In this document: positions 10,303-57,816 of the stretch, piece after piece
Layout: each line of letters starts with the position of its first letter
Position numbering within the stretch: position 1 is the first letter of the stretch
Source of the DNA: Setoptus koraiensis
Lineage: Eukaryota > Animalia > Arthropoda
NCBI GenBank assembly: GCA_048013815.1
Contig: CM106585.1
Coordinates: 3,224,001 to 3,288,000 of the forward strand
Reading direction: 5' to 3'
Length of the DNA: 64,000 nucleotides
The notes under the pieces: generated by a model
What the model saw: only the letters and a program-made list of their open reading frames with translations
Told to the model about the DNA's origin: nothing
Database searches by the model: none
Program-made: the position numbers and the translations under genes

Positions 10303-12881
10303 NNNNNNNNNNNNNNNNNNNNNNNNNNNNNNNNNNNNNNNNNNNNNNNNNNNNNNNNNNNNNNNNNNNNNNNNNNNNNNNNNNNNNNNNNNNNNNNNNN
10401 NNNNNNNNNNNNNNNNNNNNNNNNNNNNNNNNNNNNNNNNNNNNNNNNNNNNNNNNNNNNNNNNNNNNNNNNNNNNNNNNNNNNNNNNNNNNNNNNNNNN
10501 NNNNNNNNNNNNNNNNNNNNNNNNNNNNNNNNNNNNNNNNNNNNNNNNNNNNNNNNNNNNNNNNNNNNNNNNNNNNNNNNNNNNNNNNNNNNNNNNNNNN
10601 NNNNNNNNNNNNNNNNNNNNNNNNNNNNNNNNNNNNNNNNNNNNNNNNNNNNNNNNNNNNNNNNNNNNNNNNNNNNNNNNNNNNNNNNNNNNNNNNNNNN
10701 NNNNNNNNNNNNNNNNNNNNNNNNNNNNNNNNNNNNNNNNNNNNNNNNNNNNNNNNNNNNNNNNNNNNNNNNNNNNNNNNNNNNNNNNNNNNNNNNNNNN
10801 NNACGATCTTACACTCTAATATGGAGGTTCTGAAGAAAACTTAGATTACAACAATTATCAAGGTGGATTCAGACGAGGCGAACCCCCTCGAGCTCGTAGC
10901 AGCTATAAAACGTAGCAACATCAAGCAAGCATCAAAAAGCTAATAAGTGAAATATTAAGCAAAGTTTTTGGTGAAGAAGACAGTGTCAACGAAGGAGATA
11001 TAGATTCAGAATAAGACAACAGCATTAATAGAGATATGGCCGACAACATGAATGACAACGATAACGACAATATCAGCGTAGATGGCGAAATGAACGAAAA
11101 TTCCGCACCTAGAATGTTAAGAAGACCTCAATTCTTCGAGGGAAATCCGAAGGAAGCAAGACAATGGATTTCGGATTTCGACGATCGTATTGAGATAAAT
11201 GACTGGAAAGGTACAACTCCAGCACTGCGATTCCGCGCCTTTCTGAAAGGCAGCGCCCAGAATTGGTATAACGGCGCAATCAAGAATTCAGATATTAAAC
11301 TCGATTATGATAAAGTTAAGGAACAATTCGTCCGATGGTTTATCCCACGTTCAACAAGAATACACATAGCGAAAGAGTTGGACAACCGCGTACAAAGAAA
11401 AGAGGAGCCGGTCTCTAACTTTATCTGCGACATGAGATTATTATGTCAACAGTACGATGAAAAGATGCCAGAAGAGGAGATAGATTCGCAAAAGAGTATT
11501 AAGAAGTTTCGAGCCCATGCTCACTAACGCCAAACCGACGACATTAGAAGAACTATTAGAAACCTGCATAAATCTAGAGGAAGGTTTGATGAGAAAACGA
11601 AATTGGTCTGTGTTTTGGTTATCACCGCTGATGTTGTAGTTAGCCTGCCTGTTTCCATCGCCGTGATTTCTGTTTCCTTTTTGTTGGTTGTTCGAATTCT
11701 GGCCATATCGCTGTCCATCCGCTCTTCCTGAATTGTTATAATGGCGTCGCTGGTTGTTGGCTTGGCGGTTGAAGTTGTTGCCTTGGGAGCTGCGGTAGTT
11801 TTGGCCGTTATTGTTAGGACGGTTGTTGTTGTTGTTTTGGCCACGATTGTTGTAACGGTTTGCACCACCGTTGTTGTGATTGTTGTTCTGGCCACCGTTT
11901 TGTCGACCAATCCTATTACCGTTATTTCTGCTCTCATTAACTCGAGTGGGACAAACCTTAGATATGTGGCCGCGTCCGCCACAGTTAAAGCAATTTTTAC
12001 TGTTGCCATTGTTTTTCGCCACTACTGCGTCGACATTGTTGTTGCTCTGAGCGGGAACATGGAAATCTCATACTTAAAACCGACGCATCCAAATTAAGGT
12101 TTGGAGCGATTCTTTTGCAAGAACAAGAGGGAGAATATAGGATAGTCGCGACCACAAGCCGGAGGCTGTCTTCTGGGGAAAAGTCTTTAGGTTTCACACA
12201 CCTTGAAGGCGTCGCTCTGGTCGACGCCGTACGAAAATTCAGGCCCTACATCTTTGGCCGCAAGGTCAAAGTTGTAGTTGACCATTGCGCTTTGTGCGCA
12301 TTAGCAAGAACAAAGCCGCTAGAAGGCAAAGCAAGCCCGCTGGGCAATTGCTTTGTCACAGTACGACCTAACTATTGAATACCGCTCAGGCAAACGGCAT
12401 CTGGACGTGGATTGTTTGCCACGACAACCCGTCGCAGACTGCGATGACAAGTTAGACGAGGATAAATTCATCTTCGCGATAATCCCTTTAGAGGATTATC
12501 GTGGAGAATACAAGGATGACAAGGAATGCACTGCAGCTATACAAAGGGCGCAGCGCGGCGACAGTAAATTGACCATTAACAATGGGTATATATATAAGAG
12601 CGATAAATTAATTGTGCCATTCAAATTCAGAGACGAGCTAATAACCAACATACATGTACAAGGCCATCCTGGTATAAGACAAACTATAGAATTAATTGAA
12701 CGAAATTAGGGTGTTGTAGCGAACTGGGCGTAGCTCAGATCGCGACGAAACTCACGGTGTGTGTACCTTAAGGGGCCCTGATGAAGATTTGTTTGGACCG
12801 GAAGTGTAGAAACTACAGGTTCCGGTTTTAGCTTAATCTTCGAGCTACAGTCTTGAAAGTCAATATGTAGGTGGATTTGAT

Positions 12882-13736
12882 GGGTGTTCTAGCGAATAGT
12901 GCCACACTCAGATTTCAACCAGACTTCACACATGGGCCTCGAAGGGCCCCCTAAAAACGGATTCGCTAGTCCGGAAGTGCGGAAACTTTCGGTTCCGGTT
13001 AACCACAAACTTCAAGCTAGAGCCATGAAATTTGATGAACAGCAGGATGCAGACGTGCTGAGTACAACGGAGTTCGTTTCACCTGTGTGCGGCTTCCGGT
13101 TCAAGAGATATTCAGGAAAAACCGCGTGGGTATTCCCTTCGGAACAAAGCATCCGCGCGCACGAGTCTTTACGTGCGCCAATTCATCCCGATATCTCTCC
13201 AATTCTTGATGATACGCATCATTGTGATGAATTCAGTTTCTATCGTCGCATTTCTTCAACCAAGAATTTTCCATGGTTTGCAGTCACGTGAGCGGAGGGT
13301 AGAGGGCGTAGCCCGATACCCGAAGCGCTCATCAACCCTACCCGAAGGGCTCCCGTCGCACGCAGTCGTCGCGGGAGCGACGACGGAGATGTGACGGCCT
13401 CCAAATTACGAGGCCGCAGGCCGAGTTCTCAGACCCACCGCAGGTTCATCCCCGAGTGCAGCGAAGCTGAAATTCGTCATTGGTTCGGTCTTCTGGACCA
13501 ATAAATAAGCCGATATTTTGAGAACCGGAAGTCACACCCAGCTGATAATTATGCCATCGTGTTCATCGTCTTTTGGAACGCTAATATGGTGAATTTCAGA
13601 CCTCTAGCTCTAACTTGAGGTAAAACCGGAAGTTTCCGCACTTCCGGACCACTTTTTCCGTTCCATTGAGGTCAAGATGAACCTATACCGGAAATTTCAT
13701 CAGAATCTGGGTGTGGCACTATTCGCTAGAACAACC
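12882..13736 (+). mobile_element. Nested Merlin-family MITE
   Basis: TIRs GGGTGTTCTAGCGAATAGTGCCACAC / GTGTGGCACTATTCGCTAGAACAACC; TSD GATTTGAT (12874-12881, 13737-13744). Confidence 0.92.
13280..13437 (+). other. Conserved structured core of Merlin MITEs, copy 1
   Basis: Near-identical about 155-bp multi-hairpin sequence, also at 13983, 17644, 20592, 22248 and 24472. Confidence 0.85.
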
Positions 13737-13982
13737 GATTTGATTACGATGATTCCGATGACATCAACTTCTGATTCTTACAACTTCTGGTTCACAAGAT
13801 ATTAGGTGATAACCGCTGCAAGGGCGGCGACGGGACGTAATATCGACCAAATACGTGCGCTAGCAGGCACGTACAGATCAACACAAAAGCCTGCGCTACT
13901 TCCGATTCTCGAGATTCTCACAGTCGGAGGTGCAGCTTCACGATGAACAGTCTGTTCTTCTACTTACGGTCGTGTATGGATT

Positions 13983-14140
13983 GCAGTCATGTGAGCGGAG
14001 GGTAGAGGGCGCAGCCCGATACCCGAAGCGCTCATCAACCCTACCCGAAGGGTTCCCGTCGCACGCAGTCGTCGCGTGAGCGACGACGGAGATGTGACGG
14101 CCTCCAGAATACGAGGCCGCAGGCTGAGTTCCCAGACCCA
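13983..14140 (+). other. Conserved structured core, copy 2
   Basis: Same sequence; loop variants GCA, GAA, GTGA. Confidence 0.85.
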
Positions 14141-17100
14141 TCGCATACTAATTCCTGAGCAGAGCGGAGCTCCAATTTTTCGCACTTCCGGACCGTTCTT
14201 TCCGGTCTATAGACGTCAAGATGTACTCGTACAGGATGTTTCATCTAAATCAGGGCGGGGCACTAATCGATACAACAACTGATCCTTGGAGCGGTGATCA
14301 TGCGTTATGCTGAAATACCCATCATACCTTACACCAGTTATTTCGAATCCGAGTCGATTCTCCACTTCCGGAATACCTTTAAAGGGATGAGGGTTCTCTG
14401 ATGTACGCTAATAGTGCCCAAAATACCTTCAAGTACGCTACGAAGACTCTTAGCGATCGTCTGGTATCTCATAACGCCCACTGTGCGGTACCTCGGGTAA
14501 CTCGAAAACCGTAAATTTTTACATCTTATGAATATCTGTTTGGGTATCAGGGTACTATACTCTACCTGAATATACCCAAAATACCCAGATCGGAACTACG
14601 CCCAGTTCGCTACAACATCCCGAAATTACACATGGGAAAACCTCAAAGACGACGTTAAAGCAAAAGTAGAAGCGTGCCAAACGTGTCAAAAGCACAAAGT
14701 TCTTCGTGAAAAGCCAAGTGGTTTGATGCACTCATTCACCCCGCACAGACCATTCGAAGTTGTATGTTTAGATCATTTTGGACCACTCGATAGTACAAGC
14801 AAAGGAAGTAGACACGTATTGGTTGCCATCGACTCATTTACGAAATTCGTCATGGCAGCACCGACACTATCCACATCTTCAGAGGAAGTGGTAAAGTTTA
14901 TAATAAACAATATCATCGCAGTACACGGAGTACCACAGGTCCTATTCTCAGACAATGGAAGTGGATTCACCGCAAAGTTGACTAAAGATGTATGCAAGGC
15001 ATTTGGAATTGAATTGGTTTGGAATTAGTTGAATTGGACTCTACGCCTTATCATCACAAAGGTAATAGCATAGTCGAACGTGTTATTCAAACACTTCAAG
15101 ATAAGATTGGTATGGCAATGACCGACATAGGCGATGCGGAATGGGAAGACCACGTGGGTATGGCGTGTCTGGCCACAAACGCAACCCGTCATTCTAGCAC
15201 TAAGTATAGCCCATACGAATCGTTGTACGGTCGAAAAGTACGTTTACCGCGAGAAGCAGTAGACATATCAGATGAAACAGAAGTATTTGCAGAAAATCTA
15301 CAAGCACGACTAGAACTCATAAGAAGAGACGTGGCGACGAATATCAATCACGGCAATGAACTCTCCAAGAAATACTACGATAGCAAAAGACAAGAGAGGA
15401 AATTCATTATTAACGACGAAGTGATGGTCCACTTCGAGCCCAAGCAGGACACTAGACCCAACAAGTTATCAACTACTTATAGAGGACCGTACGTAGTAGT
15501 GGACATCAAACCTCACGATATCTACAAATTGGAACTAATCGGAGCCAAAAAGAAGCGAATTATTATGGCTCATGTATCGCGTCTCAAAGCCTACAAAAGA
15601 GATGCGACAGATAATGTACATGAGGAACAGGAGAGACACGGCGAAAACGTTGAAATAATCGACCTGGATAAACCTGAAGAGCTAGAAGAAGCAACAGTTA
15701 AGGAACGCCAGACGCCTAAGCAACACTCGAGGCGTAAGCAGAACTTCAGCATGCTCAGTATCATCGCACTACTACAATTGTTTTCAACATCGCAAGCCCA
15801 AGTGGCTCACAACTTTATAGCATCTGAATCCGTCATATGGACCAACACCGACATTCCAGTTGTAAACGGCATCATACATTACAATATGGATTATTATGTA
15901 GATGATCCGTACCACACATTATTCACCGGCGCATCTGCATCAAATCAAACGGATGCGCACATGATCGACAAGTGTTACCAAATATTCTCGGACAAAATTC
16001 TCAGACCGTTAGAGAACTTTTGCAATGGAACTAATGAGAGCAGAGACAAGAGACTCGTAGGCGACATCGCAGCCTTCGCCATATCGACAAGCTCTTTGAT
16101 TGTAGCCCTTGACGTGAAGAAAAATTATGTCCCTTATTTGAAGAACGCAGTTGCCCAATTGAGAGCTACCGTAGAGGACTCTCGTGACATCACCAGACGC
16201 TTGGACTACAAGGTGGAAGATTTGCGCGTTGCAGTAAAAATAGATCACGAAGTAACCGAGCGCTATCTAGAGAGATTCGCAAAAGAGATCGCAGAAATCC
16301 AATCTCAGGAAAACATAAACACTGCAGCGGCCATCCTATTCGCAGAATATATGGACAACGTGGAAACCACGAACGCTATCATATTAAAAGCTAAAGATGG
16401 ATGGTTATTCGAAGGAAGAATCCGCCCGGAACTATTTCGTATTTTTGGAGCCGGGGAGGAGTTTAACCAGAATGATGGAAAGAACGGCAGGCTAAGATCC
16501 TGCAGATACGATAAGCAGAAACTAACGTTGGCCATCACAACCCATAAGATAGATGGAACGTCGTCCATACTTAGCGCAAACCGACTGAACTTTTGGAATG
16601 GAACTGAGGAAAACATATGTATTAGCACGTACGTAGGCTCGAAGATGGCTTTGGTCAATGCAACCTCTAAATGCAACATAGAGGTCACACAGGATGAAAT
16701 CCAAGGAGATGGATCGTACCGTCACTCGTGTACCGAGTTAAACTCACTCACCCAAGGCTAAAATTACTGGAATAGTACAGAGTGTGTACACATGAAGAAC
16801 ATAACAACAGACTTATTCAAGTACGTGAGCAAGTCAGGATATAACCATGTATACTGCTTTCCATCGAACATTACAATAGAAGGCGACACATTCCCATGCC
16901 CAAAGGGACCGTTTAAGTTACCAGACGAGCAATCGTTCGTGGTAGCGAACAAACATTTCTACGAAGCCGAACGACATATGATATTGTTTGTCAACGACTT
17001 AGCCGCACAATCAAAGATCAATTACAAACTGATGACCAATTACCAACCGATTGTAATTGAGGGCTTTGAGAAATCGGCTAAAATCTTAGATAATTTACCT

Positions 17101-17200
17101 GGACTGGCCAACATCACAGGTATAAAATGGATCGAGGATATTCCACGACATCCAGGACTGAGAGCTTTATCCGATATCCTCACAGGAGACTTCGACTCTT

Positions 17201-18075
17201 GGTTATTCTATACAGGAACGCCGCACTTTTTTCGGGGATTTTTGGGTATTTTCAGCTGGGGTATTGTGCCCTGATACCGGATTGTGTATTCCGGAAGTGC
17301 GGAAATTCCTCGTTCCCGAGATAACCGAGGTACCGCTTAGTAGGCGTTTCTCAATACCCGACGACCGCGAGCGTTTTTTTGGGGTAGCATGGGTGTTACA
17401 GGGTAGAGCAACTCATTGTGACCAAGTATGGGTACTTTATGTGGTGAAGATAGTGACCCCGAGATCAAGCAAAAGTGGTCCGTGCCAGGGCGTAGGAAAC
17501 AAACATTTACGGCGACCAAAAGAGATGGGGCCCCTGCAGACAAGCTTACTTTTGCAGATTTGAGCTTTGCATCGCTGGGCGATGAGTCTGCGTTTGATCT
17601 GAAAACACAGCAATATGAACACACAACTTTATAGCATCAGAAATCACATCTCCGTCGTCGCTCCCGCGACGACTGCGTGCGACGGGAACCCTACGGGTAG
17701 GGTTGATGAGCGCTTCGGGTATCGGGCTGCGCCCTCTACCATCCGCTCACATGACTGCAATCCATACCCGAACAATAGTGGAAGATCAGAATGTTCCCTG
17801 TCAACTCCCCCAAACACATGTGAAAATGCCTCTTCCAAAAGAGTAACGGCAGTATTATAGGAACCGGAAGTCGTTCAGATCTGAAATTGACTCTTTTGTT
17901 TTTGACATGCTCTGAGCAGGCTGTATACTGAGTTTCAAGCTTATATCTTTGATTTTTCTTGAAACCGGAAGTTTCCGCACTTCCGGACCTTCGAATTTAT
18001 TGTTGTCGAGCCCTGCGGGCCCCGTGTGTTGAGTTTCATTGGAATCGGAGTGTGGCGCTCTTGTATAGAATACCC
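17201..18075 (-). mobile_element. Merlin-family MITE with non-matching flanks
   Basis: TIRs GGTTATTCTATACAGGAACGCCGCACT / AGTGTGGCGCTCTTGTATAGAATACCC; same subterminal modules and core; flanking 8-mers CGACTCTT and CTTGCATT differ. Confidence 0.8.
17644..17758 (-). other. Conserved structured core, copy 3 (partial)
   Basis: Lacks the GGCCTC/GAGGCC hairpin; GAA loop changed to GTA. Confidence 0.8.
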
Positions 18076-18785
18076 CTTGCATTCTATGATCCTTGTCATA
18101 TACTGTTCAAAAACATTACTGGCGTCGTTGCACTTGATGAAGAATTAACAGATGTGTGTTCACTTCGATTCAAACATGACATTTTAGAAAAGCTAAAAGG
18201 CGTAACTGATCAACACTACCTAACTAAGAGAGACTTTGGTGTAACAGTTGCTACAGTAACTGCCTTGTCAGCACTGTACGTCGCGACAACGACGACAACG
18301 ACCGCCGTTAAGGGAACGCGCATGGAAAATAACAACAAAGATTTAGTAGAAAGACTCAACGAACGCGTGACAGCGCCACAGGAAACAATGATAGCATCTG
18401 AAGGAAGAATATCAGTGAAGATTGCAGAGCTACAGAAAGACGTAGACTACATGGGTTCGCTTCTGTTAGTTCAACCCAGAATTCATGACGAATTGAATCA
18501 AGTACTTCTACGAATTCACGAGGAGAAATTTAAGCTTGAACAACTCAACAAAGCTCTAAGAGTCAACTAACAAGTACCTATGGTACTTCTAGAACTTGTT
18601 AATTCCACAAATATGTTGAACACAGTCACATTGAGGCATTCAATAGTACATAAGTTCGGTTTTAGAGGCGATGAATTGGTTATCAGCGCCGCTCTATTGA
18701 AAAGGAGTCCCGAAGTCCAAATCATGAGGGCCGATCCTTTTACATATTATGCCATCGACATGATTACAAGTTTCGTGTGTAGATA
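18076..18785 (+). pseudogene. env: Env-like glycoprotein fragment
   Basis: FYDPCHILFKNITG...DVCSLRF...LTKR and later IMRADPF align with the other env copies; internal stop at 18568-18570. Confidence 0.82.
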
Positions 18786-18830
18786 GCTGGCTCTGTAGCT
18801 TGTTCACATATTGTTGAATTTCTCAATTAG

Positions 18831-19000
18831 TTAAAGTATCCCAACATTACACATGTTCACCCTATGGAGTTTTGAAATATGATTCCCGTGTTGAAGTATC
18901 TAAACATTACACATGTTAACTCTATGGAGTTTTGAGTCCCTCAATTCCTGTGTTAAAGTATCTAAACACTACACATGTTAACTCTATGGAGTTTTGAGTC
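18831..19000. repeat. About 60-bp tandem repeat x3
   Basis: AAGTATC...ACATTACACATGTT...CTATGGAGTTTTGA repeated at about 60-bp period; shares a motif with the HINE interior. Confidence 0.8.
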
Positions 19001-19015
19001 ATGACTGGCTTGGTC

Positions 19016-19145
19016 AAGACCGGCACAGTCGTGACCGAATCGGCTGTGACCGAATCGGCCGTGACCGAATAGGCCGTGACCGAATTGGCCGTGACCGGCT
19101 CAGTCGTGACCGGCTCAGTCGTGACCGGCACAGTCGTGACCGGTT
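19016..19145. repeat. 15-bp minisatellite x8-9
   Basis: GTGACC recurs every 15 bp from 19031 to 19136. Confidence 0.9.
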
Positions 19146-19166
19146 CGTCTATGACTTTATGATTTC

Positions 19167-19525
19167 TAGCGCTTAATTTTAACTAAGTAGCTACTGGGGT
19201 AGTGATGATGGATACGTTTATTCACGTGACTATGTAATCCTATGGAGGTTTGACTTAGTCAAATTTGTGAGAATCCTGCTAGACATTACACATGTATTCC
19301 TATGTAGATTCGACTTGGTCTATTATCGCTTCACTCGAAAATATTTCGCATGCAATCCTATGGAGATTTGGTGATAAATCGAATTCGAGATTGGAAATTC
19401 GAATTTTCGATGAGAGTTTCAGGTGCTCGTTCGATGATCGATGGTCAGAGTTGGATGTTCGATGGTCAGGGTTCGATGTTCGGAGTTCCATGGTAACAAT
19501 TCGAACTTCGAAGTATGTGATAACA
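19167..19525 (+). mobile_element. HINE/Helentron-like element, 5' fragment
   Basis: TAGCGCTTAATTTT subTIR plus shared 5' block identical to 43376 onward. Confidence 0.7.
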
Positions 19526-20088
19526 TGTCGGACCCGTGCTCTCCCTACAGAGAACTCATTGGAAGTTTGTTGTACGCTGCGTGCCTGACACGCCCCGATA
19601 TCCAATTCAATGTAAGTGTGCTATCACGATATAATGAAGCACCAATGGAAAAGCACTGGTCAGCAGCTAAACGCATATTGAGATATCTCAAGGGTACTCT
19701 GGAGCTAGGGATACGATTTACTCCCTCCCCAGCATCAGCCTTGACTGTTACACAGACGCTGATTGGGGAGGAGATACTCTCAATATAAAATCGACAAGTG
19801 GTATGTTATGTTTCCTTGCAGGTGGGCTGGTCTCTTACCGAACAAAGAAACAAACAATCGTCGCCCAGTCAACTGCCGAGGCAGAGTATGTTGCCGCGAG
19901 CCTAGGGGTGAGAGAGATACTAGGCATCAAGAATACTTTAAAAGAACTAGACATCAAGATCGATAAGACAACGTTATACATAGACAACCAGCCAGCCATT
20001 CGGATCATACAAAATCCCAAACAAAGGAAAAATACCAAACACATCGGCCTCAACCACTTAATCAGAGACCACTACAACAAGAAATTAT

Positions 20089-21148
20089 GGTTATACTTGC
20101 GAAGTGGGCACCCATCAGATTGGGGTATTTTGGGTATTTTTGGGTAGGGTATAGTACCCTGATACCAGATTGGGTATTTATAAGATGTAGAAACTTACGG
20201 TTTCCGAGGTACCCGAGGTACCGCACAGTGGGCGTTTTGTGATACCCGACGACCGCTAGCGGTTCCCACTTCTTTTTTTGAAGATAATTTTGTTACAGCA
20301 AGGTACAGTCGAGTATTTTGAACTCAGTAGTCGTATACCGGAAGTGTTAAAATGAACCCGATGTGCGATACCAGGGTTTACCCGGGTATTTCGGGTATCC
20401 GAGTTAGTAATAGGCTGCGCGAGGGTAATAATCACAACCGCATGAGTGCGGCATGACCGTTGCGGGTAGCGCGCGGTACCCGGGGTACCCATGCTCACCC
20501 GTCAATCCCCGGCGCACGCGAAATTCATTTTTAGCGAGATTCATGAATATTATCACCAAGGTAGATACCACACTCGGGACCGCACCTGTGATGGGTCTGA
20601 GAACTCGGCCTGCGGCCTCGTAATCTGGAGGCCGTCACATCTCCGTCGTCGCTCCCGCGACGACTGCGTGCGACGGGAACCCTTCGGGTAGGGTTGATGA
20701 GCGCTTCGGGTATCGGGCTGCGCCCTCTACCCTCCGCTCACATGACTGCAAACCATAGACGAGAGTAAGAGACAAGAAGAAATGTTGAAAGCCTCGGAAC
20801 ATGATTCAAGCGCTTCGACGACTTGTGTGGCGACATGTCTGAGCCTCTTGGCGCACGTATTTTCTCGTGCGCACGAATATCTCGTCCCGGGCGGAATACC
20901 CGCGCGGTTTTACCTGAATATCTCTGGATCCGGAAGTCGCACAGGCATGAAATGGACTACATTGTACTGAGAATGAATGTAGTCTGCTGCATACCAAGTT
21001 TCATGTCTCTAGCTCGAAGTTGAAGCTGAAACCGGAAGGAGTAATTTCTACACTTCCGGTCTAGAAGAATCGTCATCAGGGGCCTCTAGAGTACCCACAT
21101 GGTGAGTTTCGTGGTGATCTGATGGGTGCCCACTTCGCAAGAACACCC
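20089..21148 (-). mobile_element. Merlin-family MITE
   Basis: TIRs GGTTATACTTGCGAAGTGGGCACCCATCAGA / TCTGATGGGTGCCCACTTCGCAAGAACACCC; TSD GAAATTAT (20081-20088, 21149-21156). Confidence 0.93.
20592..20749 (-). other. Conserved structured core, copy 4
   Basis: Full-length copy. Confidence 0.85.
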
Positions 21149-22247
21149 GAAATTATTCGAACTTGAGTACGTAAAGTCTGAAGAACAGAAGGCCGACATC
21201 ATGACCAAGTCCCTACCTCCAGCTAAACACAGCAATATGATTGTTAAATTAGGTATGATAGCCGTATTATGCCTAATCCAACTGATAGACTCCAACATGG
21301 CCCTAGACATCGACGACCTAGTCATTTGGAGACCCACCAAGGTTAATCACATACAGGGCCAACAAAACATAGAACTAGACCTAATGTTCAAAAATCCATG
21401 CAAACAATTGTTCTCCAATTTAACATCGATTAGAGCAATCGACAAACAACTTATAAGCATCTGCAACAATCGATTCGAATCAAGAATAAAACAGAAGATG
21501 GACAGCCTATGCCCTGAAAAGAAACGTACAGCCAGGTCACCTACAATTGGGACAATGGTTGCAGCGGTTTCCGCTGTGGTCATGACTGCACATCGAATTA
21601 TCTGATCAACAAGCGGATCAAGATCGACGCGAACTACGCCGCGACAACCAAGTACTACATCAACTGACGGTTGTTGTAGCGATTAGGTCCCCACCCAGAT
21701 TCTGATGAAACTTCCGGTATAGGTTCATATTGACCCAAATAAGACGGGAAAATTACTCCGGAAGCCAGGAAACTTCCGGTTCCGGTTTGAAATAAAGTTG
21801 AAGCTAGAGATCTGAAACTCACCAGACCGACGTTTCAGAGAACGCTGAACAGAATGGCATACTTTTCAGCTCTGTGAGACTCCCGGTTCTCAGGATATCG
21901 GCTTATTTATAGGTTTGGAAGACCGGAAGTAGACGAATTTCAGCTTTGCTGCACTCGGGTATGAACCTGCGGTTATAGTCCCGAAGAGCGACACACTTTT
22001 TTTGGGGTATCTTGGGTATTTTCGGGTAGGCTATAGTACCCTTATACCTAGATAGGTATTCCGGAAGTGCGGAAATTCCTGGTTCCCGAGATAACCGAGG
22101 TACCGCTCTATGGGCGTTTCTCGTTACCCGACAGCCGCTCGGGGATTTGCGGGTATTTTTTCGGGGTAATTTTTGGTTCCTCGATGAAGTCGCGTCCAAT
22201 ACAGCAAGGAATAGTAGAAATAGGCCTTAGCTTCGCTCTGTTTGTGA

Positions 22248-22405
22248 TGGGTCCAAGAACTCGGCCTGCGGCCTCGTAATCTGGAGGCCGTCACATCTCC
22301 GTCGTCGCTCTCGCGACGACTCCGTGCGACGGGAACCCTTCGGGTAGGGTTGATGAGCGCTTCGGGTATCGGGCTGCGCCCTCTACCCTCCGCTCACGTG
22401 ACTGC
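22248..22405 (-). other. Conserved structured core, copy 5
   Basis: Tetraloop variant GAGA. Confidence 0.85.
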
Positions 22406-22803
22406 AATCCATACCCCGTCAAAAGAGATGATCAGACTGCGAACTGTGAAGCCCAAGATTTCCCTGCATCCCATCGAATGCGCAGGCTTCAGATTTAATA
22501 ACAGTTCATCAATCAGCGTAATTCCGACCGATTGCGCAAGTATAGCTTCTGGCAGGTTTTCTGATGACGGCATTCTATCGACCCGTTCGCAGAACTCGCT
22601 AAGATCATGCGCATAGAATAGAAGCAAGAGGTGAAAACCAACAAAAACGGCCCTTATCAGAGCAACCCCAACTTTGAACAACTTTCTCTTGGTTTTTCCC
22701 AAAAATCTCGAGAACCGCGCGTCCAACATGGCTGAAATTGATGACGTTGTGCTCAGCATGCTTGAATCTACCGGTGTACCGAGTTTTGAGTCTGTATCTC
22801 AAA

Positions 22804-24331
22804 GGACCTGTTGCATTTAGGGTCTCCAGAATCAAACTGGTCTGACATACATGAATATAGTATTTTCGTGATCGGAAGAGCCTCCTGAGCACGAATATAC
22901 CAATTGCATCATCCTTTAGTTCGACGTTTAGCCACTAGGCGGCGTTGCTGTTTTTCGCTTTGGGGGCCTCTGGAGCCACTGTCTCTAGTCATAGAGACAC
23001 GTTCCTGATATCGTTGGAAGACGCATCTATAGAGGGTATAATTTTTCCCTAGACTCGAATCCAAGTCCGGGAAAAAATCAAAAGAAAACTTTGGCCCCAT
23101 TTTGTGGGGCCCCAAGAATGTCCGCCCAGAGATTTGACAGCTCATAAAAATAGCCCTATAAGAGAGCTTCAAAATGATATATAATACAACGAAATCAAAT
23201 TGAACGTCGATGACCAAAAATGAAAAAAACCACATACACATCCCCTCGAATTAGAGATAAAAGGCGGATCGGGTGCTCTGTTGATCAGAAGCCAAGCTCG
23301 ATTTCTATAAAAATTGACACGTGGGCTATGAATGGGCCCATGAAGGCGTTCTCGATAGTCCAGAAGTGCCTTAAAGTCTACTTCTCGAGATAGAAAAAAA
23401 CCGGAATCTCGGGCCTCGGAGGGGCCTCAGAACAATTATCATTGCATAGTTGTCTAGATTTATATATCACTTTTGAAGTGGTGTGAAAATTCGCCCTCTG
23501 CGTCGATTCAATCGTTCGAAATCTACTGTTGGTTATGTTGGGTACGCATACGCACTCCTAGAGATGCTGGGAGGCCCAAGGCCGAGTCGACGAAGATCGA
23601 AAAAGGGGTCGGTAGTACTGACAGTACCATTCAATCAGTGAACGAGCGAAGAGTGGCGATATATCACTAATATTCTGATATCAATATGTCATCAAATACC
23701 CAAAAATACCCAGAATAAGGTACCTCTGGTATCTCGGTAACGAAGGATTTCCGCACTTCCGGGATACCCGATCGGATATCAGGGTACAGTACCCTACCCA
23801 AAAATACCGAAAATACCCAACTGGGGCTTGTCCGTCATTCAACGAGACACCGATCCACCATTTGTCTCTATTTTCGGTGGGGGGTGTATGTGGTTTTTTT
23901 CATTTTTGGTCATCGACGTTCAATTTGATTTCGTTGTATTATATATCATTTTGAAGCTCTCTTATAGGGCTATTTTTATGAGCTGTCAAATCTCTGGGCG
24001 GACATTCTTGGGGCCCCACAAAATGGGGCCAAAGTTTTCTTTTGATTTTTTCCCGGACTTGGATTCGAGTCTAGGGAAAAATTATACCCTCTATAGATGC
24101 GTCTTCCAAAGATCTATCCAACGATATCAGGAACGTGTCTCTATGACTAGAGACAGTGGCTCCAGAGGCCCCCAAAGCGAAAAACAGCAACGCCGCCTAG
24201 TGGCTAAACGTCGAACTAAAGGATGATGCAATTGGTATATTCGTGCTCAGGAGGCTCTTCCGATCACGAAAATACTATATTCATGTATGTCAGACCAGTT
24301 TGATTCTGGAGACCCTAAATGCAACAGGTCC
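22804..24331. mobile_element. Spy-like non-autonomous DNA transposon with about 450-bp TIRs
   Basis: GGACC...GGTCC termini with long near-perfect inverted repeats; flanks AAA|TTT with no TSD. Comparison with the uninterrupted paralogous sequence near 36765-36790 supports the site. Confidence 0.78.
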
Positions 24332-24471
24332 TTTCATTAAAACCGGAACCGGAAGTTTCCGCACTTTCGGACCACTCAATTTGTGCTAAGAGAGCCCTAC
24401 GGGCCCCATGTGTGAAGTTCCATCTCAAAAGAAGTGTGGCGCTCTTCGGGACTACACCCGAACCTGCGATA

Positions 24472-24627
24472 GGTCTGAGAACTCGGCCTGCGGCCTCGTG
24501 ATTTGGAGGCCGTCACATCTCCGTCGTCGCTCCCGCGACGACTGCGTGCGATGGGAACCCTTCGGGTAGGGTTGATGAGCGCTTCGCGTATCGGGCTGCG
24601 CCCTCTACCCTCCGCTTACATGACTGC
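24472..24627 (-). other. Conserved structured core, copy 6 (a few stem mutations)
   Basis: Belongs to the outer MITE 21669-24989. Confidence 0.8.
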
Positions 24628-25765
24628 AATCCAGACACAGATGTTTGGAATGGCAGAAGAATACGATAATGCATGGTGCTGCGCATACGTGGCACAGAAT
24701 GAGTCCGCTGGACGCAACCGCACAGACCCGGCCACACCCTCGGTTCAGCTTGAACCTCTTTATCCACCGAACCGGAAGTAATAGAAAATTAATTTTGATG
24801 CCATTATGCTCCGCTAGGTGTCTCCTATCTAATTCCTAAATTTGGGAGCTCTATCTCGATATTTCCGTATCTCCGGAACCGGAAGTTTCCTGGCATCCGG
24901 AATACTAAATTCATAGTATGGGGCCCCCACGGGGCTCTTGTGTGAAGTTTCATCGAGATCCGAGTGGGGACCTCATCGCTACAACACCCCAACTGACATA
25001 CGAACTAAAGAAAAAGATGGAATCCCTCAAAACCCTTATACTAGTTCAAACCAGTGCGACGGACAATCAAATCAATGAAATCATGCGGAATGTTGAGGTA
25101 ATCTCGTCCGTACAAAAGGCACAATCAAATATTACCGACGCACTCTTCCAAGTTTTGTTATATTAGAATCACCTGAGTCATCTCTGTCATCTATACTATC
25201 ATTAGTCAATGACTCGTTCGACGAATCTCCAAATATTCTTTTTATTTCTGAATTGCATGAATCGTCACTGTCATTGGTGTCACTGTCTTCTCTATCAACT
25301 GATTCTTCTAATGAACTCTTTAGAACAGAATTACATGAAATATAGTTTGGAGTCGTATCTTGTTTTTCGTCTTCATCTTCAGAGATACGTATTATTTCCA
25401 CGGGTGATATAGATGATTTACTAACAGTATTCATCATGGATTGGTTATTTCAAAATGTCTTTCTGTGATTTACTCAAGCTGTCAGTTTGTTATTTCATAC
25501 TCGATACAAGTATACTAGTGTATCCAATTATATATATGCATTTATTGTTTTAGTCTTCCAAGATGCGGTTAATTATATTCATAACTGGTACTATTTGTCT
25601 ATAATTGATATTTGTGAACTATAACATTATCATACACCTGCATCCAAACTGATCTAAATTATTGATCTTAATTTGTTGTTATCTCAACTGAAGCTGTCAT
25701 CTAGTGATGTATCAATTATGTTCTAAACAAATATTTTGCCATAAAACACTTTGCCTATGTTTTTA

Positions 25766-28970: not shown

Positions 28971-29254
28971 ACTTTGCAATCATACTTCCCCCGGAACCGA
29001 AACATTTTGGTTTCCCGAAAGCCGCTAGGCGAGTCATTTAATTTTAATGAAAAAACTCAGCCTAATTGCTAATTGGCATCGTTTATGGTTAGAACTGGGG
29101 CGGTATCTGATCGCCTTCGAACCTCTAACTTTCGTTCTTGATTAATGAAAACATTCTAGGCAAATGCTTTCGCTTTAGTTCGTCTTGCATCGGTCTAAGA
29201 ATTTCACCTCTAGCGATGCAGTACGAATGCCCCCGTCTATCCCTCTTAACCATT
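28931..29254 (-). rRNA. 18S rRNA: 18S rRNA gene fragment (about 320 bp, isolated, probably pseudogenic)
   Basis: Conserved SSU motifs: GGTGAAATTCTTAGA, GTTAGAGGTTCGAAGGCGATCAGATACCGCCC, AAACTTAAAGGAATTGACGGAAGGGCACCAC. Confidence 0.92.
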
Positions 29255-29646
29255 GCCTCGATTCGCAAATCTTGTTAACAGTTGAGCTTTCCTGACGGGC
29301 ATCATTCATAGTAGACCTAATCTTCGAAAAATCGATGTATGTTACCTCACCCTTGCGAGTGAGGTAACATACAATCCATAGAAGCAGATTACCAGAATAA
29401 ATGCCACCCAACAGATAACATTATTAGATTTAGCGAACTTGTTTGTTGGTTAGAACCGAGGCCAGTCAGAATTCTTCGTGACGGATCGATAGTGTGACAA
29501 TTCTCCTTAAAAGTATAAAGATCTACGTTCGTAACCTCCCTACGATCTAATTATACATTATTTTATTTACTAGAGTTTATTTATTGATACGGCACTTCGA
29601 CTATAGACATTTCTAGCCTCAGTGTCTGTGGTGGCTAGACCGACAT

Positions 29647-30453
29647 TCAGTTTGGCCAAGTTCTGAGGCGACCCTCGGTGAGCGGGGAGCCTTCCTCGTA
29701 CCATTCAAACGGACAATATCCGTTTGCGATCGGATTGGCCGGTATGCCGCGTTCCAACATTTTGCATCTGTGCTCGTCTAATCTAAACCTAGCATTGTCA
29801 ACATTTTGAGTATCCTTTGTTGCACTCCACAATCGTTCAGCGACCGCCGACGCTCTTGGCCAGGCCAGTTCCAACAATTTGGCCCCATCTACATACTCTG
29901 TCCAAATGCACGCCTCACCACCAAGAACGCGATCCTTTTTAATTGGGTTGTCAGTGAAACTGTGCGGCTCACATTGATAATATTTCTCCCAATCTGGCCC
30001 GTAACTGATGTAATTTAGATACCAGCAAGCGGACAACACCAGAGGATTGCCATACTCTGCCATTGTGTTCATAGTTTCACGCCACGGTTTCGATCCATAA
30101 TCTTTCCACACCTCAACAATTGCATCCACTGGTACCTGTGCTTGATTATCCAACGGGTCTTGCCAAATGATTGTTTTGTAGCCTAATTTTTGTACGTTGT
30201 CGATGGTTTTTGTTACATAAAATGTCTCCAGGTCTTTGGTGCTATTAAAATTGTTCTTAAGCATCCACGAACGAATCTCTGGATTGGACTCCCAACAATC
30301 GTAATAGCTCTCGTCCATACCCAAATGAATATAGGGATCGGGAAATAACTGTTTGACTTCTTGTATGATGTCGCTGACCACTCTATAGGTGTTTTCATTA
30401 ATAGGATTCAATATCTCTTGTTCGGCGTGTCTAGGATAATTGGGCGTGTTGGG
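29647..30453 (-). CDS. GH20 beta-N-acetylhexosaminidase, C-terminal part (5' end in N gap)
   Basis: IHLGMDE catalytic motif, LSACWYLN, VLGGEACIWTEYVD, WPRASAVAERLWS; frame open up to the gap; no introns in this part. Confidence 0.93.
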   Translation of the reverse strand, partial: PNTPNYPRHAEQEILNPINENTYRVVSDIIQEVKQLFPDPYIHLGMDESYYDCWESNPEIRSWMLKNNFNSTKDLETFYVTKTIDNVQKLGYKTIIWQDPLDNQAQVPVDAIVEVWKDYGSKPWRETMNTMAEYGNPLVLSACWYLNYISYGPDWEKYYQCEPHSFTDNPIKKDRVLGGEACIWTEYVDGAKLLELAWPRASAVAERLWSATKDTQNVDNARFRLDEHRCKMLERGIPANPIANGYCPFEWYEEGSPLTEGRLRTWPN

Positions 30454-33712: not shown

Positions 33713-33825
33713 GGTTATAGTAGCGAACAGCGACCACGCCCAATTTGGGTATTTGGGGTATTTTTGGGTAGGGTATTGTACCCTGATACCCGAACAGGTA
33801 TTCCGGAAGTGCGGAAATTCTTCGT
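33713..33825 (-). mobile_element. Solo Merlin MITE end
   Basis: GGTTATAGTAGCGAACAGCGACC plus GGGTATT module, near-identical to 38721 onward. Confidence 0.8.
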
Positions 33826-38559: not shown

Positions 38560-40560
38560 CCTGATACCAAAAGAAGTTAGTGACATAGACCTCAAATTGA
38601 CAGTTAAAATAGACACTGCCGAGTCCAATTCTCTTGGCATTGAATTCGACTTGAGGACAGATGCAAATTCAGAGGCCGCATTCGCCTTCATATTAAACAC
38701 ACGGCAACATGAGAAATTCGGGTTATAGTAGCGAATAGCGACCACGCCCAATTTGGGTATTTTGGGTATTTCTGGGTAGGATATTGTACCCTGATACCCG
38801 AACAGGTATTCCGGAAGTGCGGAAATTCTTCGTTACCGAGATACCCGAGGTACCGCATACTGGGTATTTTAGGGTATTAGAGGGCATATTGAGGGTAAAG
38901 TCGGCCGTACCTATCCGCTAGGACATCCGGTCAGATGCTGAGGTCCTCGCATCGAAGAAAAATCATTCCTAGAAGCCACAGGAAGCGAATGAAAGCGGTC
39001 AAAGTGAAGAGGCGTGGCCAATGCGCGCGGCGCGGAGTACAACTGCCCGCAGTTAGTGAGACCACCCACCGAGTCCTAGCACTACTGAGGATGATGAAAG
39101 TTGAATAAAGGCTTAGCCCTGACTTTTTCGACGCTTTCGACCTCGCGGACCGCGCTGACTCGGAACTCCGCTCGTACTGACCCCTATTCCGATCTTTACC
39201 GACTCGGCCTTCGGCCTCGCGAGCTTGCCTCGCTTCGGGTTGAGGGCTTCGCCCTCAACCCTCGCTCGAACCGACAACCCCGGCCTTCGGCCGAGTAATT
39301 GTCACACACCCGAACACCAGAAACAATGCGAATGCGTGCCAGGCTGAGTGCGGCTCGTGAGACGTCAGATGTGTTTCGAATTGCATGACCGGAAGTTGGT
39401 CCAACAGTGAATGGTGGATATCTCCTGAGTGGATGATTGTGAGGGTGAGATTCTAACCGCATGTTGACGGTGGCAACTGGACCTATTCGAAAATACCTAA
39501 ATTTCTAGTCTGAGGCACTCCTGAGGCCCGGAAAATGCTTTTCCCCGTATCTCCGGAAGTAGAAATTTCCGCACTTCCGGACCTTCAAAAACGTTCTTTG
39601 GGGCCGCGAAGCGGCCCTTGTGTGGAGTTTGAAGGGAATCGGGCTTGGTCGTTGTTCGCTACTACACCCGAAATTCGTTCTTCAGCTGACAAAAGAGTCC
39701 GACAAATGACATACTGGATCATTCATCGCTGGCCTCCTAAAACGTGTTATAAAGAAGATAGGCTTGACCAAGATAATCAACATAATATCCGACGGTGCAT
39801 CAGAGTGTGTTCTAGCGAGAAAGCTCATCACTGACGAACACTCAACCATAATAAGTACGCGCTGTCTCGCCCACTTGGCTAATTTGATCGGGCAGAAGTC
39901 ATTACAATTATCTGGAATGGACCCGATTGTGAAGAAAGCAGACACCTTTGTATCGTTTATCAATAGGTAAAAGATACTCAAGGCACATCTACAAGCAAAG
40001 GGAGTTAGGAAATTGAAAAACATGTATCCAACCAGATGGTACTCATCAAACATAACGGTCAAGAGCTTGCAAAAGGCCAAACAGGAACTCTTTTCGTGCT
40101 AGGAACCGACACTCTTCAGTGACTTCGAAGACATATTTACATCAAGTGATTTCAGAAATAGCCTAGATGAGATGTCCGAACTCCTGGATCCGCTCTGCGA
40201 GACCATGGCCATCTGTGAAGGAAATTATACCAACGTATCACAGGCCTACTACTCTCTGATCACATCTGGTAAAATTTGCTACGAACGCTCGCACAAACAG
40301 ATCATGGCGTGGGGTTGTTACGCTCTTATGAGCTACATCAACAAATTGAATATAGACCCGATATATTCGGCTGCATTCATTTTGGACCCTCGCTGTAGGA
40401 GGGAATACGTAACAAAGGATGGTATCATTCATGGGATGGAGGCCCTGACAGACGTCGCATTGGGAATGAATATGCAGCAATCGACCGAAGACAAATGAGA
40501 GATATGTTGATGAATGAGTACAAGAGACAATGGGAAATTCAATCTAGAAATAAACATGGC
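38560..40560 (+). pseudogene. Degenerate hAT transposase interrupted by a Merlin MITE
   Basis: SLGIEFDLRTD, IISDGASECV, RCLAHLANLI, TRWYS, AAFILDPR align with the intact hAT (EFDFWSD, ITDQGAN, RCMAHYCNLI, VRWYS, TYFLDPK); stops and frameshifts. Confidence 0.82.
38721..39669 (-). mobile_element. Merlin-family MITE (lacks the shared core, has a different hairpin cluster)
   Basis: TIRs GGTTATAGTAGCGAA / TTCGCTACTACACCC; TSD GAAATTCG (38713-38720, 39670-39677). Confidence 0.92.
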
Positions 40561-57800: not shown

Positions 57801-57816
57801 AATTCATTTGGAAGAA

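What the first reader, a model, noticed from the sequence alone, without database searches (positions are those of the whole stretch)
13280..24627. About 155-nt structured core conserved in six divergent Merlin MITEs, varying mainly at GNA/GNRA loop positions
Seen: one copy per MITE, always in the same orientation relative to the GGG end, far more conserved than the surrounding MITE sequence or the TIRs. In that sense: closing helix GTCA(C/T)GT/ATGTGAC (C-G or T.G both tolerated); long hairpin capped c-GCA-g or c-GTA-g with tandem GA/GA; ACCC-GAA/GTA-GGGT; GTCGTCGC-loop-GCGACGAC with loops GGGA, GTGA, GAGA (all GNRA); GGCCTC/GAGGCC with a variable 8-nt loop. A few stem-breaking changes exist (copies 1 and 6). 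Known: cGNAg triloops are extra-stable ssDNA hairpins and GNRA are stable RNA tetraloops. Inference: selection on a strand-specific single-stranded fold, such as an unknown ncRNA or ribozyme, or an ssDNA origin/recognition structure carried by a cut-and-paste element. I could not match it to a known family.
Basis: partly seen in the sequence, partly recalled or inferred. Interest (0 to 1): 0.78.

Follow-up and report, generated by a model that had tools for sequence, protein, structure and literature searches.

The report
Conserved hairpin-cluster core inside MITEs
Six small non-autonomous DNA transposons that have otherwise drifted far apart all carry one nearly identical, non-coding 125-150-base segment. 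On one strand it reads as a string of very stable mini-hairpins, so these elements probably depend on a folded single strand. The window alone cannot say what that fold does.

Summary
Six MITEs with 5'-GG ends, five of them with perfect 8-bp target-site duplications, each carry one copy of a G+C-rich core in the same orientation. The cores are 94-98% identical. The arms are 63-82% identical and the first 30 nt of the terminal repeats about 66%.

The core is not coding, not a tRNA and not an Rfam family.

Six near-identical copies give no base-pair covariation, and the long-range closing helix is ambiguous. Three other signals support a constrained, strand-specific fold:
- Variable columns are about 4-fold enriched in hairpin loops (p = 0.006), and all changes in the tri- and tetraloops hit the N position.
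- Perfect stems capped C-GNA-G or C-GNNA-G occur 29 times on the sense strand of the MITEs and twice on the other strand. Shuffles give about 0.05 per core.
- A seventh, diverged relative keeps three such hairpins, with one A-U to U-A swap.

The hairpin apices match the known extra-stable DNA mini-hairpin consensus. I read the core as a cis-acting folded single-strand module, more DNA-like than RNA-like, kept by selection among transposon lineages. A coral MITE group with a conserved interior is a precedent. No further copies could be retrieved.

The parts
12882..13736 (+). MITE EA (855 bp). TIRs start GGGTGTTCTAGCG / GGTTGTTCTAGCG, 8-bp TSD GATTTGAT. It is nested inside EB and carries core copy 1.
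12709..14620 (+). MITE EB (1049 bp once EA and one TSD copy are removed). 8-bp TSD CGAAATTA, inserted in a Ty3/gypsy integrase reading frame. Carries core copy 2.
17201..18076 (-). MITE E3, with no clear TSD. Carries core copy 3.
20089..21148 (-). MITE E4, 8-bp TSD GAAATTAT. Carries core copy 4.
21971..24459 (-). MITE E5, 8-bp TSD GAACCTGC, inserted into E7 just 3' of E7's core. It is itself interrupted by the inverted-repeat element at 22801-24334. Carries core copy 5.
21669..24989 (-). MITE E7 (824 bp once E5 is removed), 8-bp TSD CAACTGAC. Carries core copy 6.
13273..13422 (+). Core copy 1 (sense strand is +). Sub-parts: 5' arm of the possible closing helix 13283-13289; long hairpin 13290-13330 (apex GGGC-GTA-GCCC, tandem GA/AG); ACCC-GAA-GGGC 13340-13350; GTCGTCGC-GGGA-GCGACGAC 13365-13384; ATGTGAC 13389-13395; GGCCTC hairpin 13396-13415; GGCC-GCA-GGCC 13412-22. 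A further CAGC-GAA-GCTG lies at 13459-13469.
13976..14125 (+). Core copy 2 (tetraloop GTGA)
17609..17765 (-). Core copy 3. Only the first 123 nt are conserved; the GGCCTC hairpin region has diverged. Triloop GTA in the ACCC/GGGT hairpin.
20607..20756 (-). Core copy 4
22263..22412 (-). Core copy 5 (tetraloop GAGA)
24485..24634 (-). Core copy 6 (three stem-breaking changes)
38721..39669 (-). MITE E8, a seventh family member with 8-bp TSD CGAATTTC. Its central region (about 39140-39320) has diverged. Only the apical hairpin 39233-39263 still aligns to the core (covariance model 24 bits, E = 9e-4), yet three C-GAA-G capped hairpins remain on the same strand.

Best explanation
The core is a cis-acting, strand-specific module of a Merlin-like MITE family (GG termini, 8-bp TSD). 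Selection acting among transposon lineages has kept it almost invariant while the arms and even the terminal repeats diverged.

Read from the GGG end, its sense strand is a chain of short G+C stems. They are capped by C-GNA-G triloops and one C-GNNA-G tetraloop. These are the sequences GCGNAGC, CCGAAGG and GCGNNAGC, which are known to form extraordinarily stable mini-hairpins in single-stranded DNA.

The most likely mode of action is as follows. The strand becomes single-stranded during replication or gap-repair copying of the element, or by extrusion from supercoiled DNA. It then snaps into a compact multi-hairpin domain. That domain is recognised by the mobilising transposase or by a host replication or repair factor, and this promotes copying or mobilisation of the element.

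Shown: the conservation contrast, non-coding nature, hairpin motifs, strand bias, loop-limited variation, and retention of the motif type in a diverged relative.

Inferred: that the strand is ever single-stranded, that the molecule is DNA rather than RNA, and that the benefit is to transposition.
For: - Core 94-98% identical against arms at 63-82%, with a sharp common 5' boundary where identity rises from 0.38 to 0.91.
- Five of the six core-bearing elements, and the relative E8, have perfect 8-bp TSDs. The copies are therefore young, and the divergence lies between active lineages rather than in post-insertion decay.
- No reading frame shows an excess of synonymous changes.
- Variable columns are enriched in hairpin loops (6/18 against 10/128, p = 0.0056). 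All four events in the GNA and GNRA loops hit the N position, which by chance has probability (3/10)^4 = 0.008.
- Each core has 3-4 perfect C-GN(N)A-G capped hairpins on the sense strand and none on the antisense strand. Dinucleotide shuffles give a mean of 0.05, and 0 of 2000 reach the observed count.
- Across the MITEs the count is 29 sense against 2 antisense. Elsewhere there are 17 in 57 kb counted on both strands.
- E8 has lost sequence similarity but keeps three such hairpins on the same strand (1 of 2000 shuffles). Its five differences in the shared 31-nt hairpin are one loop N, one A-U to U-A swap, and two changes that turn the tandem GA/AG into G-C and A-U.
- Both strands fold better than shuffles, the sense strand more so. 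RNA z is -3.2 to -6.0 against -2.8 to -4.2 in five copies. DNA z is -2.3 to -4.7 against -2.0 to -3.5 over all six.
- From the literature: only GNA triloops form DNA mini-hairpins, any N is tolerated (Tm 70-76 C), and the RNA counterpart is far less stable. Such motifs mark ssDNA priming sites of phage G4 and RSF1010 ssiA (PMC13037366; PMC3201870).
Against: - There are only six near-identical copies plus one partial relative, all from one 27-kb neighbourhood.
- There is no significant covariation.
- Junction and other unpaired positions are as conserved as stems (4/50 against 6/78 variable). Primary sequence, not only pairing, is therefore constrained, or the core is simply young.
- The long-range helices are ambiguous.
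- The local hairpins are also palindromes in duplex DNA.
- No single-stranded step is known for DDE cut-and-paste elements of eukaryotes.
- There are no expression, probing or transposition data.
- No autonomous partner was seen.
Confidence: 0.4

Rival explanations
1. The core is transcribed and works as a structured RNA carried by the MITE: an ncRNA, a processing or stability element, or an unknown ribozyme.
For: - As RNA, the sense strand folds 4-10 kcal/mol better than the antisense in five of six copies (copy 6 is the exception), with z down to -6.0.
- GNRA tetraloop variants GGGA, GUGA and GAGA, and a tandem GA internal loop.
- G.U pairs occur only in the sense-strand long-range helices, with C-G and U.G both seen at one pair.
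- A pyrimidine-rich tract and an invariant TTGCAG sit just 5' of the core.
Against: - No Rfam family matches, even at E <= 10, and there is no tRNA-like gene.
- Three or more of the caps are GNA triloops on 4-bp stems, which are weak in RNA and exceptional in DNA (PMC13037366).
- No covariation.
- No conserved T-run or other promoter or terminator signal was seen around the core.
- No transcript data are available.
Confidence: 0.2
2. The core acts as duplex DNA. It is a platform of palindromic binding sites for the transposase or for host proteins, working as a transpositional enhancer or as the promoter or enhancer of the family. No single-stranded fold is involved.
For: - Every local hairpin is also a palindrome with a variable spacer.
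- Unpaired junction sequence is as conserved as the stems, as expected for sequence-specific protein contacts.
- The arms carry another palindromic motif (CCGGAAGT ... ACTTCCGG) typical of subterminal binding sites.
- Internal sequences that boost MITE transposition, and a coral MITE group with a conserved interior, are on record (PMC2872659).
Against: - A duplex palindrome gives no reason for the spacers to read G-N-A or G-N-N-A on one and the same strand 29 times out of 31.
- It gives no reason for changes to be confined to N.
- It gives no reason for the tandem GA/AG (T.C/C.T on the other strand) to be replaced by Watson-Crick pairs in E8.
- It gives no reason for E8 to keep GAA-capped hairpins at positions whose sequence no longer aligns.
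Confidence: 0.2
3. The core has no function of its own. It is a young segment shared by recombination, template switching or ectopic gene conversion between MITE subfamilies, or a recently captured host fragment. It has simply not had time to diverge.
For: - The elements are mosaics. Two unrelated right-arm types combine with the same core.
- Identity falls off gradually on the 3' side.
- The loops are only mildly variable.
- E8 has arms as close as the others (up to 80-82% in the right arm) but a diverged centre.
Against: - The 5' boundary is sharp and the same in all six copies.
- The few substitutions are not random: loop enrichment has p = 0.0056 and loop changes hit N only.
- The core was not found outside MITEs in the window.
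- The same hairpin type recurs in unalignable sequence of E8.
Confidence: 0.15

Closest known systems
CMITE families of Acropora corals (Wang et al. 2010, PMC2872659)
   Same: Several MITE families in one genome have different TIRs but share an internal region that is more conserved between families than the TIRs. Only the outermost TIR bases are kept. The function is unknown and was suggested to aid transposition.
   Different: CMITEs are about 100 bp long with a 75-nt interior, TTAA duplications and piggyBac-type CCYT ends. Here the elements are 0.8-1.1 kb with GG ends and 8-bp duplications, and the core is only about 15% of the element. No hairpin or strand-specific motif was described for CMITEs. 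The two cases are analogous, not homologous.
DNA mini-hairpin motifs GCGNAGC / GCGNNAGC and the ssDNA initiation signals that contain them (phage G4 origin, RSF1010 ssiA, phage N4 early promoters; review PMC13037366; d(GNA) loops PMC3201870)
   Same: The apices of the core hairpins match the consensus letter for letter: GCGCAGC and GCGTAGC (GCGAAGC in E8), CCGAAGG, and GCGGGAGC, GCGTGAGC and GCGAGAGC. Natural variation is at N, which the motif tolerates. Several hairpins are clustered on one strand, as in ssDNA priming sites.
   Different: The known sites are in phage and plasmid ssDNA replication or hairpin promoters. None is known in a eukaryotic TIR transposon, and formation of the fold was not tested here.
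Folded single-strand recombination sites (integron attC, CTX phage attP); from my own knowledge
   Same: Imperfect palindromes that work only as one folded strand. Structure is conserved more than sequence.
   Different: These sites are bacterial and are substrates of tyrosine recombinases. Here the sequence itself is also highly conserved, and the element has DDE-type hallmarks (TIRs and TSDs).
Structured RNAs encoded by transposons (TnpB/Fanzor omega RNA, IS110 bridge RNA, R2 and Penelope ribozymes); from my own knowledge
   Same: A structured non-coding module of about 100-200 nt, carried by a mobile element in a fixed orientation.
   Different: Those RNAs sit at an element end or next to the enzyme gene and have known partners. 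Here the module is internal to a protein-less MITE, matches no Rfam model, and its loop types are more DNA-like.

Membership tests
Merlin superfamily (as MITE derivatives) | TIRs with conserved terminal 5'-GG (PMC8101967) | tested here: met
   All seven elements start GGGT at the left end and GGT or GGA at the right end.
Merlin superfamily (as MITE derivatives) | 8- or 9-bp target-site duplication (PMC8101967) | tested here: met
   Perfect 8-bp TSDs in six of seven elements. E3 has none that can be recognised.
Merlin superfamily (as MITE derivatives) | Sequence relationship to an autonomous element that encodes a DDE_Tnp_IS1595 transposase | tested here: inconclusive
   None of the 20 ORFs scanned (of 33 with at least 150 aa) has that domain. 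Shorter ORFs and the rest of the genome were not examined. hAT and P elements also make 8-bp TSDs but have other termini.
Any Rfam family (hammerhead, HDV-like, twister, pistol, hatchet, snRNA, snoRNA, SRP and others) | Covariance-model score at or above the family's gathering threshold | tested here: not met
   There is no hit in the region at gathering thresholds. At E <= 10 the best hits score 8-15 bits against thresholds of 42-128.
tRNA-derived or SINE-like module | tRNA-like cloverleaf detectable by ARAGORN | tested here: not met
   No tRNA or tmRNA in the window.
Protein-coding exon | Open frame with an excess of synonymous over non-synonymous differences | tested here: not met
   In the open frames 10-13 of the 16 differences are non-synonymous. 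Peptide searches of two open frames found nothing.
DNA mini-hairpin motif (GCGNAGC / GCGNNAGC) | Sequence consensus: G-C stem, a C-G closing pair, and a loop of G-N-A or G-N-N-A | tested here: met
   There are 3-4 per core on the sense strand and none on the antisense strand. The consensus is taken from PMC13037366.
DNA mini-hairpin motif (GCGNAGC / GCGNNAGC) | Physical formation of the hairpin in single-stranded DNA (anomalous mobility, high Tm, nuclease resistance) | not testable with these tools
   Only nearest-neighbour predictions are available (DNA z -2.3 to -4.7 for the sense strand).
MITE groups with an interior more conserved than the TIRs (CMITE-like phenomenon) | Between-family identity of the internal region exceeds that of the TIRs | tested here: met
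   Core 94-98%. First 30 nt of the TIRs 19.7/30 identical between elements. See also the sliding profile.
MITE groups with an interior more conserved than the TIRs (CMITE-like phenomenon) | piggyBac hallmarks of CMITEs: TTAA TSD and CCYT termini | tested here: not met
   The TSDs are 8 bp and of varied sequence, and the termini are GG. The two cases are analogous, not the same family.

The most novel reading that the evidence does not exclude
A eukaryotic TIR/TSD-type MITE family depends on a folded single-stranded DNA signal, a cluster of mini-hairpins like the ssDNA initiation sites of phages and plasmids. That would imply a single-stranded DNA step (priming, protection or structure-specific recognition) in the amplification of a supposed cut-and-paste element. 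It would explain how subfamilies with different terminal repeats are all kept mobile.
Probability: 0.2. Interest if true: 0.85.

Novelty: new variant of a known kind. Interest (0 to 1): 0.6.

Why it matters
How MITEs reach high copy number with a cut-and-paste enzyme, and what besides the terminal repeats makes one a good substrate, is still poorly understood. Here the best-conserved part of a whole group of subfamilies is an internal, strand-specific hairpin cluster rather than the transposase-binding ends. That points to a second cis requirement that can be tested directly by deleting it, inverting it, and mutating its loops and stems. If the fold acts as single-stranded DNA, it would be the first mini-hairpin or ssi-like signal in a eukaryotic transposon. 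If it acts as RNA, it would be a new transposon-borne ncRNA. Either way it would also be a convenient marker for tracing this family.

Tried and rejected
- **Known RNA family.** Rfam was searched at gathering thresholds over the window and at E <= 10 on one copy. Nothing credible came back.
- **tRNA or SINE head.** ARAGORN found none.
- **Coding exon.** No frame has a synonymous excess. Two open frames were searched as peptide alignments, in the hope that gene callers had called them on short public contigs. There were no hits.
- **More copies from public DNA.** Two different core patterns were scanned against metagenome contigs and against prokaryote genome contigs, and one against viral contigs. 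All gave 0.
- **Source genome.** The Ty3/gypsy polyprotein of the window has a best public match of only 62% identity.
- **Literature.** A full-text search for three core and TIR strings found nothing.
- **More diverged copies in the window.** A covariance model built from the six copies and run with filters off found only the E8 hairpin.
- **The core as an independent inserted element.** Rejected: homology of the flanks continues on both sides at lower identity, and the core has no TIR or TSD of its own.
- **CpG decay as a clock or constraint test.** Dropped, because CpG observed/expected is about 1.0 everywhere in the window.
- **Splice-site idea.** A pyrimidine tract plus TTGCAG lies upstream, and GTGAGC follows 4 nt later. 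Pyrimidine content is only 0.49-0.76, and there is no consistent exon end. It is kept only as a remark.
- **The large profile search (search of protein representatives).** Not used.
Full report
**What is there.** The interval holds a nest of small TIR elements inserted into retrotransposon remains. A 20-nt pattern for the longest stem occurs exactly six times in the window, against 0 expected. A covariance model built from the copies and run with filters off finds the same six full-length matches and nothing else of that length. The copies lie at 13273-13422 (+), 13976-14125 (+), 17609-17765 (-), 20607-20756 (-), 22263-22412 (-) and 24485-24634 (-).

**The carriers.** Reading the ends gives six complete elements:
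- EA 12882-13736, nested in EB.
- EB 12709-14620.
- E3 17201-18076.
- E4 20089-21148.
- E5 21971-24459, which is itself split by an inverted-repeat element at 22801-24334.
- E7 21669-24989, which hosts E5.

Five of them have perfect 8-bp target-site duplications: GATTTGAT, CGAAATTA, GAAATTAT, GAACCTGC and CAACTGAC. All ends start with GG. The left end reads GGGTGT (GGGTAT in E3) and the right end GGTTRT, or GGATGT in EB.

GG termini with 8-9-bp duplications are the published hallmarks of Merlin (PMC8101967). No IS1595-type transposase was found among the 20 ORFs scanned. 'Merlin-like' is therefore consistent but unproven.

The core always has the same orientation relative to the GGG end.

**Host.** The window is eukaryotic and rich in transposons. 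It holds intact Ty3/gypsy polyproteins and a hAT transposase. It is not human or vertebrate:
- CpG observed/expected is 1.02, including in the repeats.
- A hexosaminidase-like ORF is only about half identical to the human enzyme.
- An SSU rRNA fragment looks to me like an arthropod-type metazoan sequence. That is my own reading, not a test.

**Conservation contrast.** After removing nested inserts and aligning the six elements, sliding-window pairwise identity shows four levels:
- About 0.65 at the TIRs.
- 0.4-0.7 through the arms.
- 0.38 just upstream of the core.
- 0.91-0.97 across about 125 nt of core, then 0.81 and 0.70 over the next 80 nt.

Segment by segment, the first or last 200 nt are 63-82% identical and the 122-nt core is 94-98% identical. 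Within each element the two TIRs match each other at 25.9 of 30 positions. TIRs of different elements match at 17.5-19.7 of 30. These are therefore distinct subfamilies.

The duplications are intact, so the copies are young. The arm divergence must then have accumulated between active lineages, not after insertion. Something has held the core still while the TIRs changed.

Flank homology continues at lower identity on both sides, and the core has no ends of its own. It is an integral part of the ancestral element, not a secondary insertion.

**What it is not.**
- No Rfam family matches at curated thresholds. At E <= 10 there are only 8-15-bit chance hits.
- There is no tRNA-like gene.
- Several frames are open because the segment is 65% G+C. 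The 16 differences from the consensus are mostly non-synonymous in every open frame.

**Fold.** As RNA, the sense strand (150 nt) folds with z = -5.9, -5.1, -1.8, -6.0, -5.6 and -3.2 in the six copies. The antisense strand gives -3.5, -3.1, -1.3, -3.9, -4.2 and -2.8. With DNA parameters the sense values are -2.3 to -4.7 and the antisense values -2.0 to -3.5.

The long-range part is not settled. A further outer helix (GGWTTGC with GCAGGCC) closes the whole 150 nt in some copies.

Covariation cannot decide between these. 27 of the 39 proposed pairs never vary, and the single double change is in the poorly alignable part of copy 3. All of the measures are matched by 83 of 500 shuffles. The RNAalifold covariation term is 0.17 kcal/mol.

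**Where the few changes fall.** There are 17 substitution events over 146 scored columns:

| Class | Events | Columns |
|---|---|---|
| Hairpin loops | 7 | 18 |
| Stems | 6 (2 keep a G.U or C-G pair) | 78 |
| Other unpaired positions | 4 | 50 |

Counting variable columns, loops have 6 of 18 and the rest 10 of 128 (one-sided Fisher p = 0.0056). With the RNAalifold structure the p value is 0.013.

All four events in the two triloops and the tetraloop hit the N position: GCA/GTA, GAA/GTA and GGGA/GTGA/GAGA. The chance of that is (3/10)^4 = 0.008.

Junction nucleotides are as invariant as stems. Either primary sequence matters too, or the core is young.

**Strand-specific mini-hairpin cluster (the strongest result).** I counted perfect stems of at least 4 bp that are closed by C-G and capped by G-N-A or G-N-N-A.
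- Each core has 3-4 on the sense strand and none on the antisense strand. Dinucleotide shuffles average 0.05, and 0 of 2000 reach the observed count.
- Over all the MITE sequence (6.6 kb) there are 29 on the sense strand and 2 on the other. In the remaining 57 kb there are 17 on both strands together, and two of those lie in MITE fragments.

The apices read GCGCAGC or GCGTAGC, CCGAAGG or CCGTAGG, GCGGGAGC, GCGTGAGC or GCGAGAGC, and CCGCAGG. In three of the six elements there is a further GCGAAGC or GCGGAGC about 45 nt downstream of the core. These are the published consensus sequences of the extraordinarily stable DNA mini-hairpin. From PMC13037366 (see also PMC3201870):
- Only GNA triloops form it.
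- Any N is tolerated, with Tm 70-76 C.
- The RNA counterpart of the tetraloop version melts at 39 C, against 76.5 C for the DNA.
- CCGAAGG is the hairpin of the RSF1010 ssiA priming signal.
- Such motifs occur at the phage G4 origin.

A duplex palindrome gives no reason for its spacer to read G..A on one strand every time.

**A diverged relative.** E8 (38721-39669, TSD CGAATTTC) is a seventh family member. Its right arm is up to 80-82% identical to those of the others. Its centre no longer aligns, apart from a 31-nt apical hairpin (covariance model 24 bits, E = 9e-4).

All five of its differences in that hairpin are compatible with the structure:
- The loop N changes, giving GCGAAGC, the prototype mini-hairpin.
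- One A-U pair becomes U-A.
- The tandem GA/AG becomes G-C and A-U.

One swap is not significant on its own (105 of 500 shuffles). The E8 centre still folds better than shuffles, with z = -3.8 as RNA and -4.0 as DNA. It carries three GAA-capped G+C hairpins on the same strand, two of them in sequence with no alignable counterpart (1 of 2000 shuffles). The type of structure has therefore outlived the sequence.

**Interpretation.** Shown:
- A non-coding segment that evolves many times more slowly than the rest of the element, TIRs included.
- It is built of one-strand-specific mini-hairpin motifs.
- Its variation spares the stems and the loop G and A positions.

Inferred: the fold forms in vivo and benefits propagation of the element.

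I favour a folded single strand over a duplex binding platform, because of the strand bias and the N-only changes. I favour DNA slightly over RNA, because most of the caps are GNA triloops on short stems.

Two further scenarios remain open. One is a transcript-level function. The other is a 'young segment spread by recombination'. The latter draws on three points: the arms are mosaic (two unrelated right-arm types), the 3' boundary is gradual, and E8 lacks the core.

**Relation to known things.** The general phenomenon has a precedent. MITE families with different TIRs that share an interior more conserved than the TIRs were described in the piggyBac-type CMITEs of Acropora. Their function is unknown and was guessed to aid transposition (PMC2872659). 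That paper also cites work showing that internal sequences can enhance MITE transposition. The new points here are:
- A different superfamily signature.
- A core that is a small part of a kilobase-sized element.
- The mini-hairpin architecture with its strand bias.

**Limits.**
- No further copies could be obtained. Five public DNA scans and two peptide-trick searches were blank.
- The best public relative of the window's gypsy polyprotein is 62% identical. The source genome therefore seems to be absent from those collections.
- The large profile search was not spent on a non-coding target.
- All statistics rest on six related copies plus one partial relative. They should be repeated genome-wide.

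**Verdict.** This is a new variant of a known but unexplained kind of MITE feature, and it leads to a concrete, testable hypothesis.

Noticed in passing
window 28992-29622 (-) and 29647-30411 (-): A fragment of eukaryotic SSU rRNA (Rfam model positions 613-1116, 224 bits) lies directly downstream of an intron-less GH20 hexosaminidase-like ORF. That ORF is about half identical to human HEXB over 235 residues. The pair looks like a chimeric retrocopy or a transduced fragment inside the repeat nest.
   Followed up: partly
window 22801-24334: An inverted-repeat (foldback-like) element with arms of about 450 nt that are 98-100% complementary, inserted in MITE E5. Its centre holds pieces of MITE arms at 23291-23369 and 23697-23819. 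No clear TSD was seen.
   Followed up: partly
window 12709-14620, 17201-18076, 20089-24989, 38721-39669 (element ends): Within each MITE the two TIRs match at about 26 of 30 positions. TIRs of different MITEs match at about 18 of 30. The two ends therefore change together from subfamily to subfamily. Position 3 is G at the left end in all seven elements and T or A at the right end. This could reflect co-evolution with transposases, homogenisation, or pairing of the ends.
   Followed up: partly
about 55-75 nt from the GGG end of each MITE, e.g. 18008-18024 (-), 24392-24408 (-), 39600-39616, and the MITE fragment near 1392 (-): A second hairpin in the left arm keeps a G+C stem with different sequences in different subfamilies. 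Its loops are GCA, GTA, GTG and, in E8, GAA on the opposite strand.
   Followed up: partly
both arms of every MITE, e.g. 13626-13648, 17965-17987, 24349-24371: A subterminal palindrome built of CCGGAAGT and ACTTCCGG, an ETS-site-like octamer, is conserved in both arms. It is the likeliest transposase or host-factor binding motif of the family.
   Followed up: no
window 18822-19170: Two adjoining tandem arrays lie next to MITE E3: three units of about 60 nt, then about nine units of 15 nt.
   Followed up: no
window 57808-59418 (+) and 60121-63999 (-): Two long ORFs (536 aa and 1292 aa) have no Pfam family and no relative among solved structures.
   Followed up: partly
TSDs at 12701-12708, 12874-12881, 20081-20088, 21661-21668, 21963-21970, 38713-38720: Three of the six duplications are close variants of one another (CGAAATTA, GAAATTAT, CGAATTTC). 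This hints at a target preference for the family. Orientation relative to the element was not normalised.
   Followed up: no
window 1269-1451, 33713-33826, 36642-36906: Further fragments of the same MITE family (arm pieces only, no core) show that the family is spread through the window.
   Followed up: partly
45 nt upstream of each core (sense strand), e.g. 20757-20801 (-): A poorly conserved but pyrimidine-rich tract (0.49-0.76 Y) ends in the invariant TGGWTTGCAG. A GTGAGC follows 4 nt later. The arrangement resembles splice sites, but I could not turn it into a consistent exon model.
   Followed up: partly
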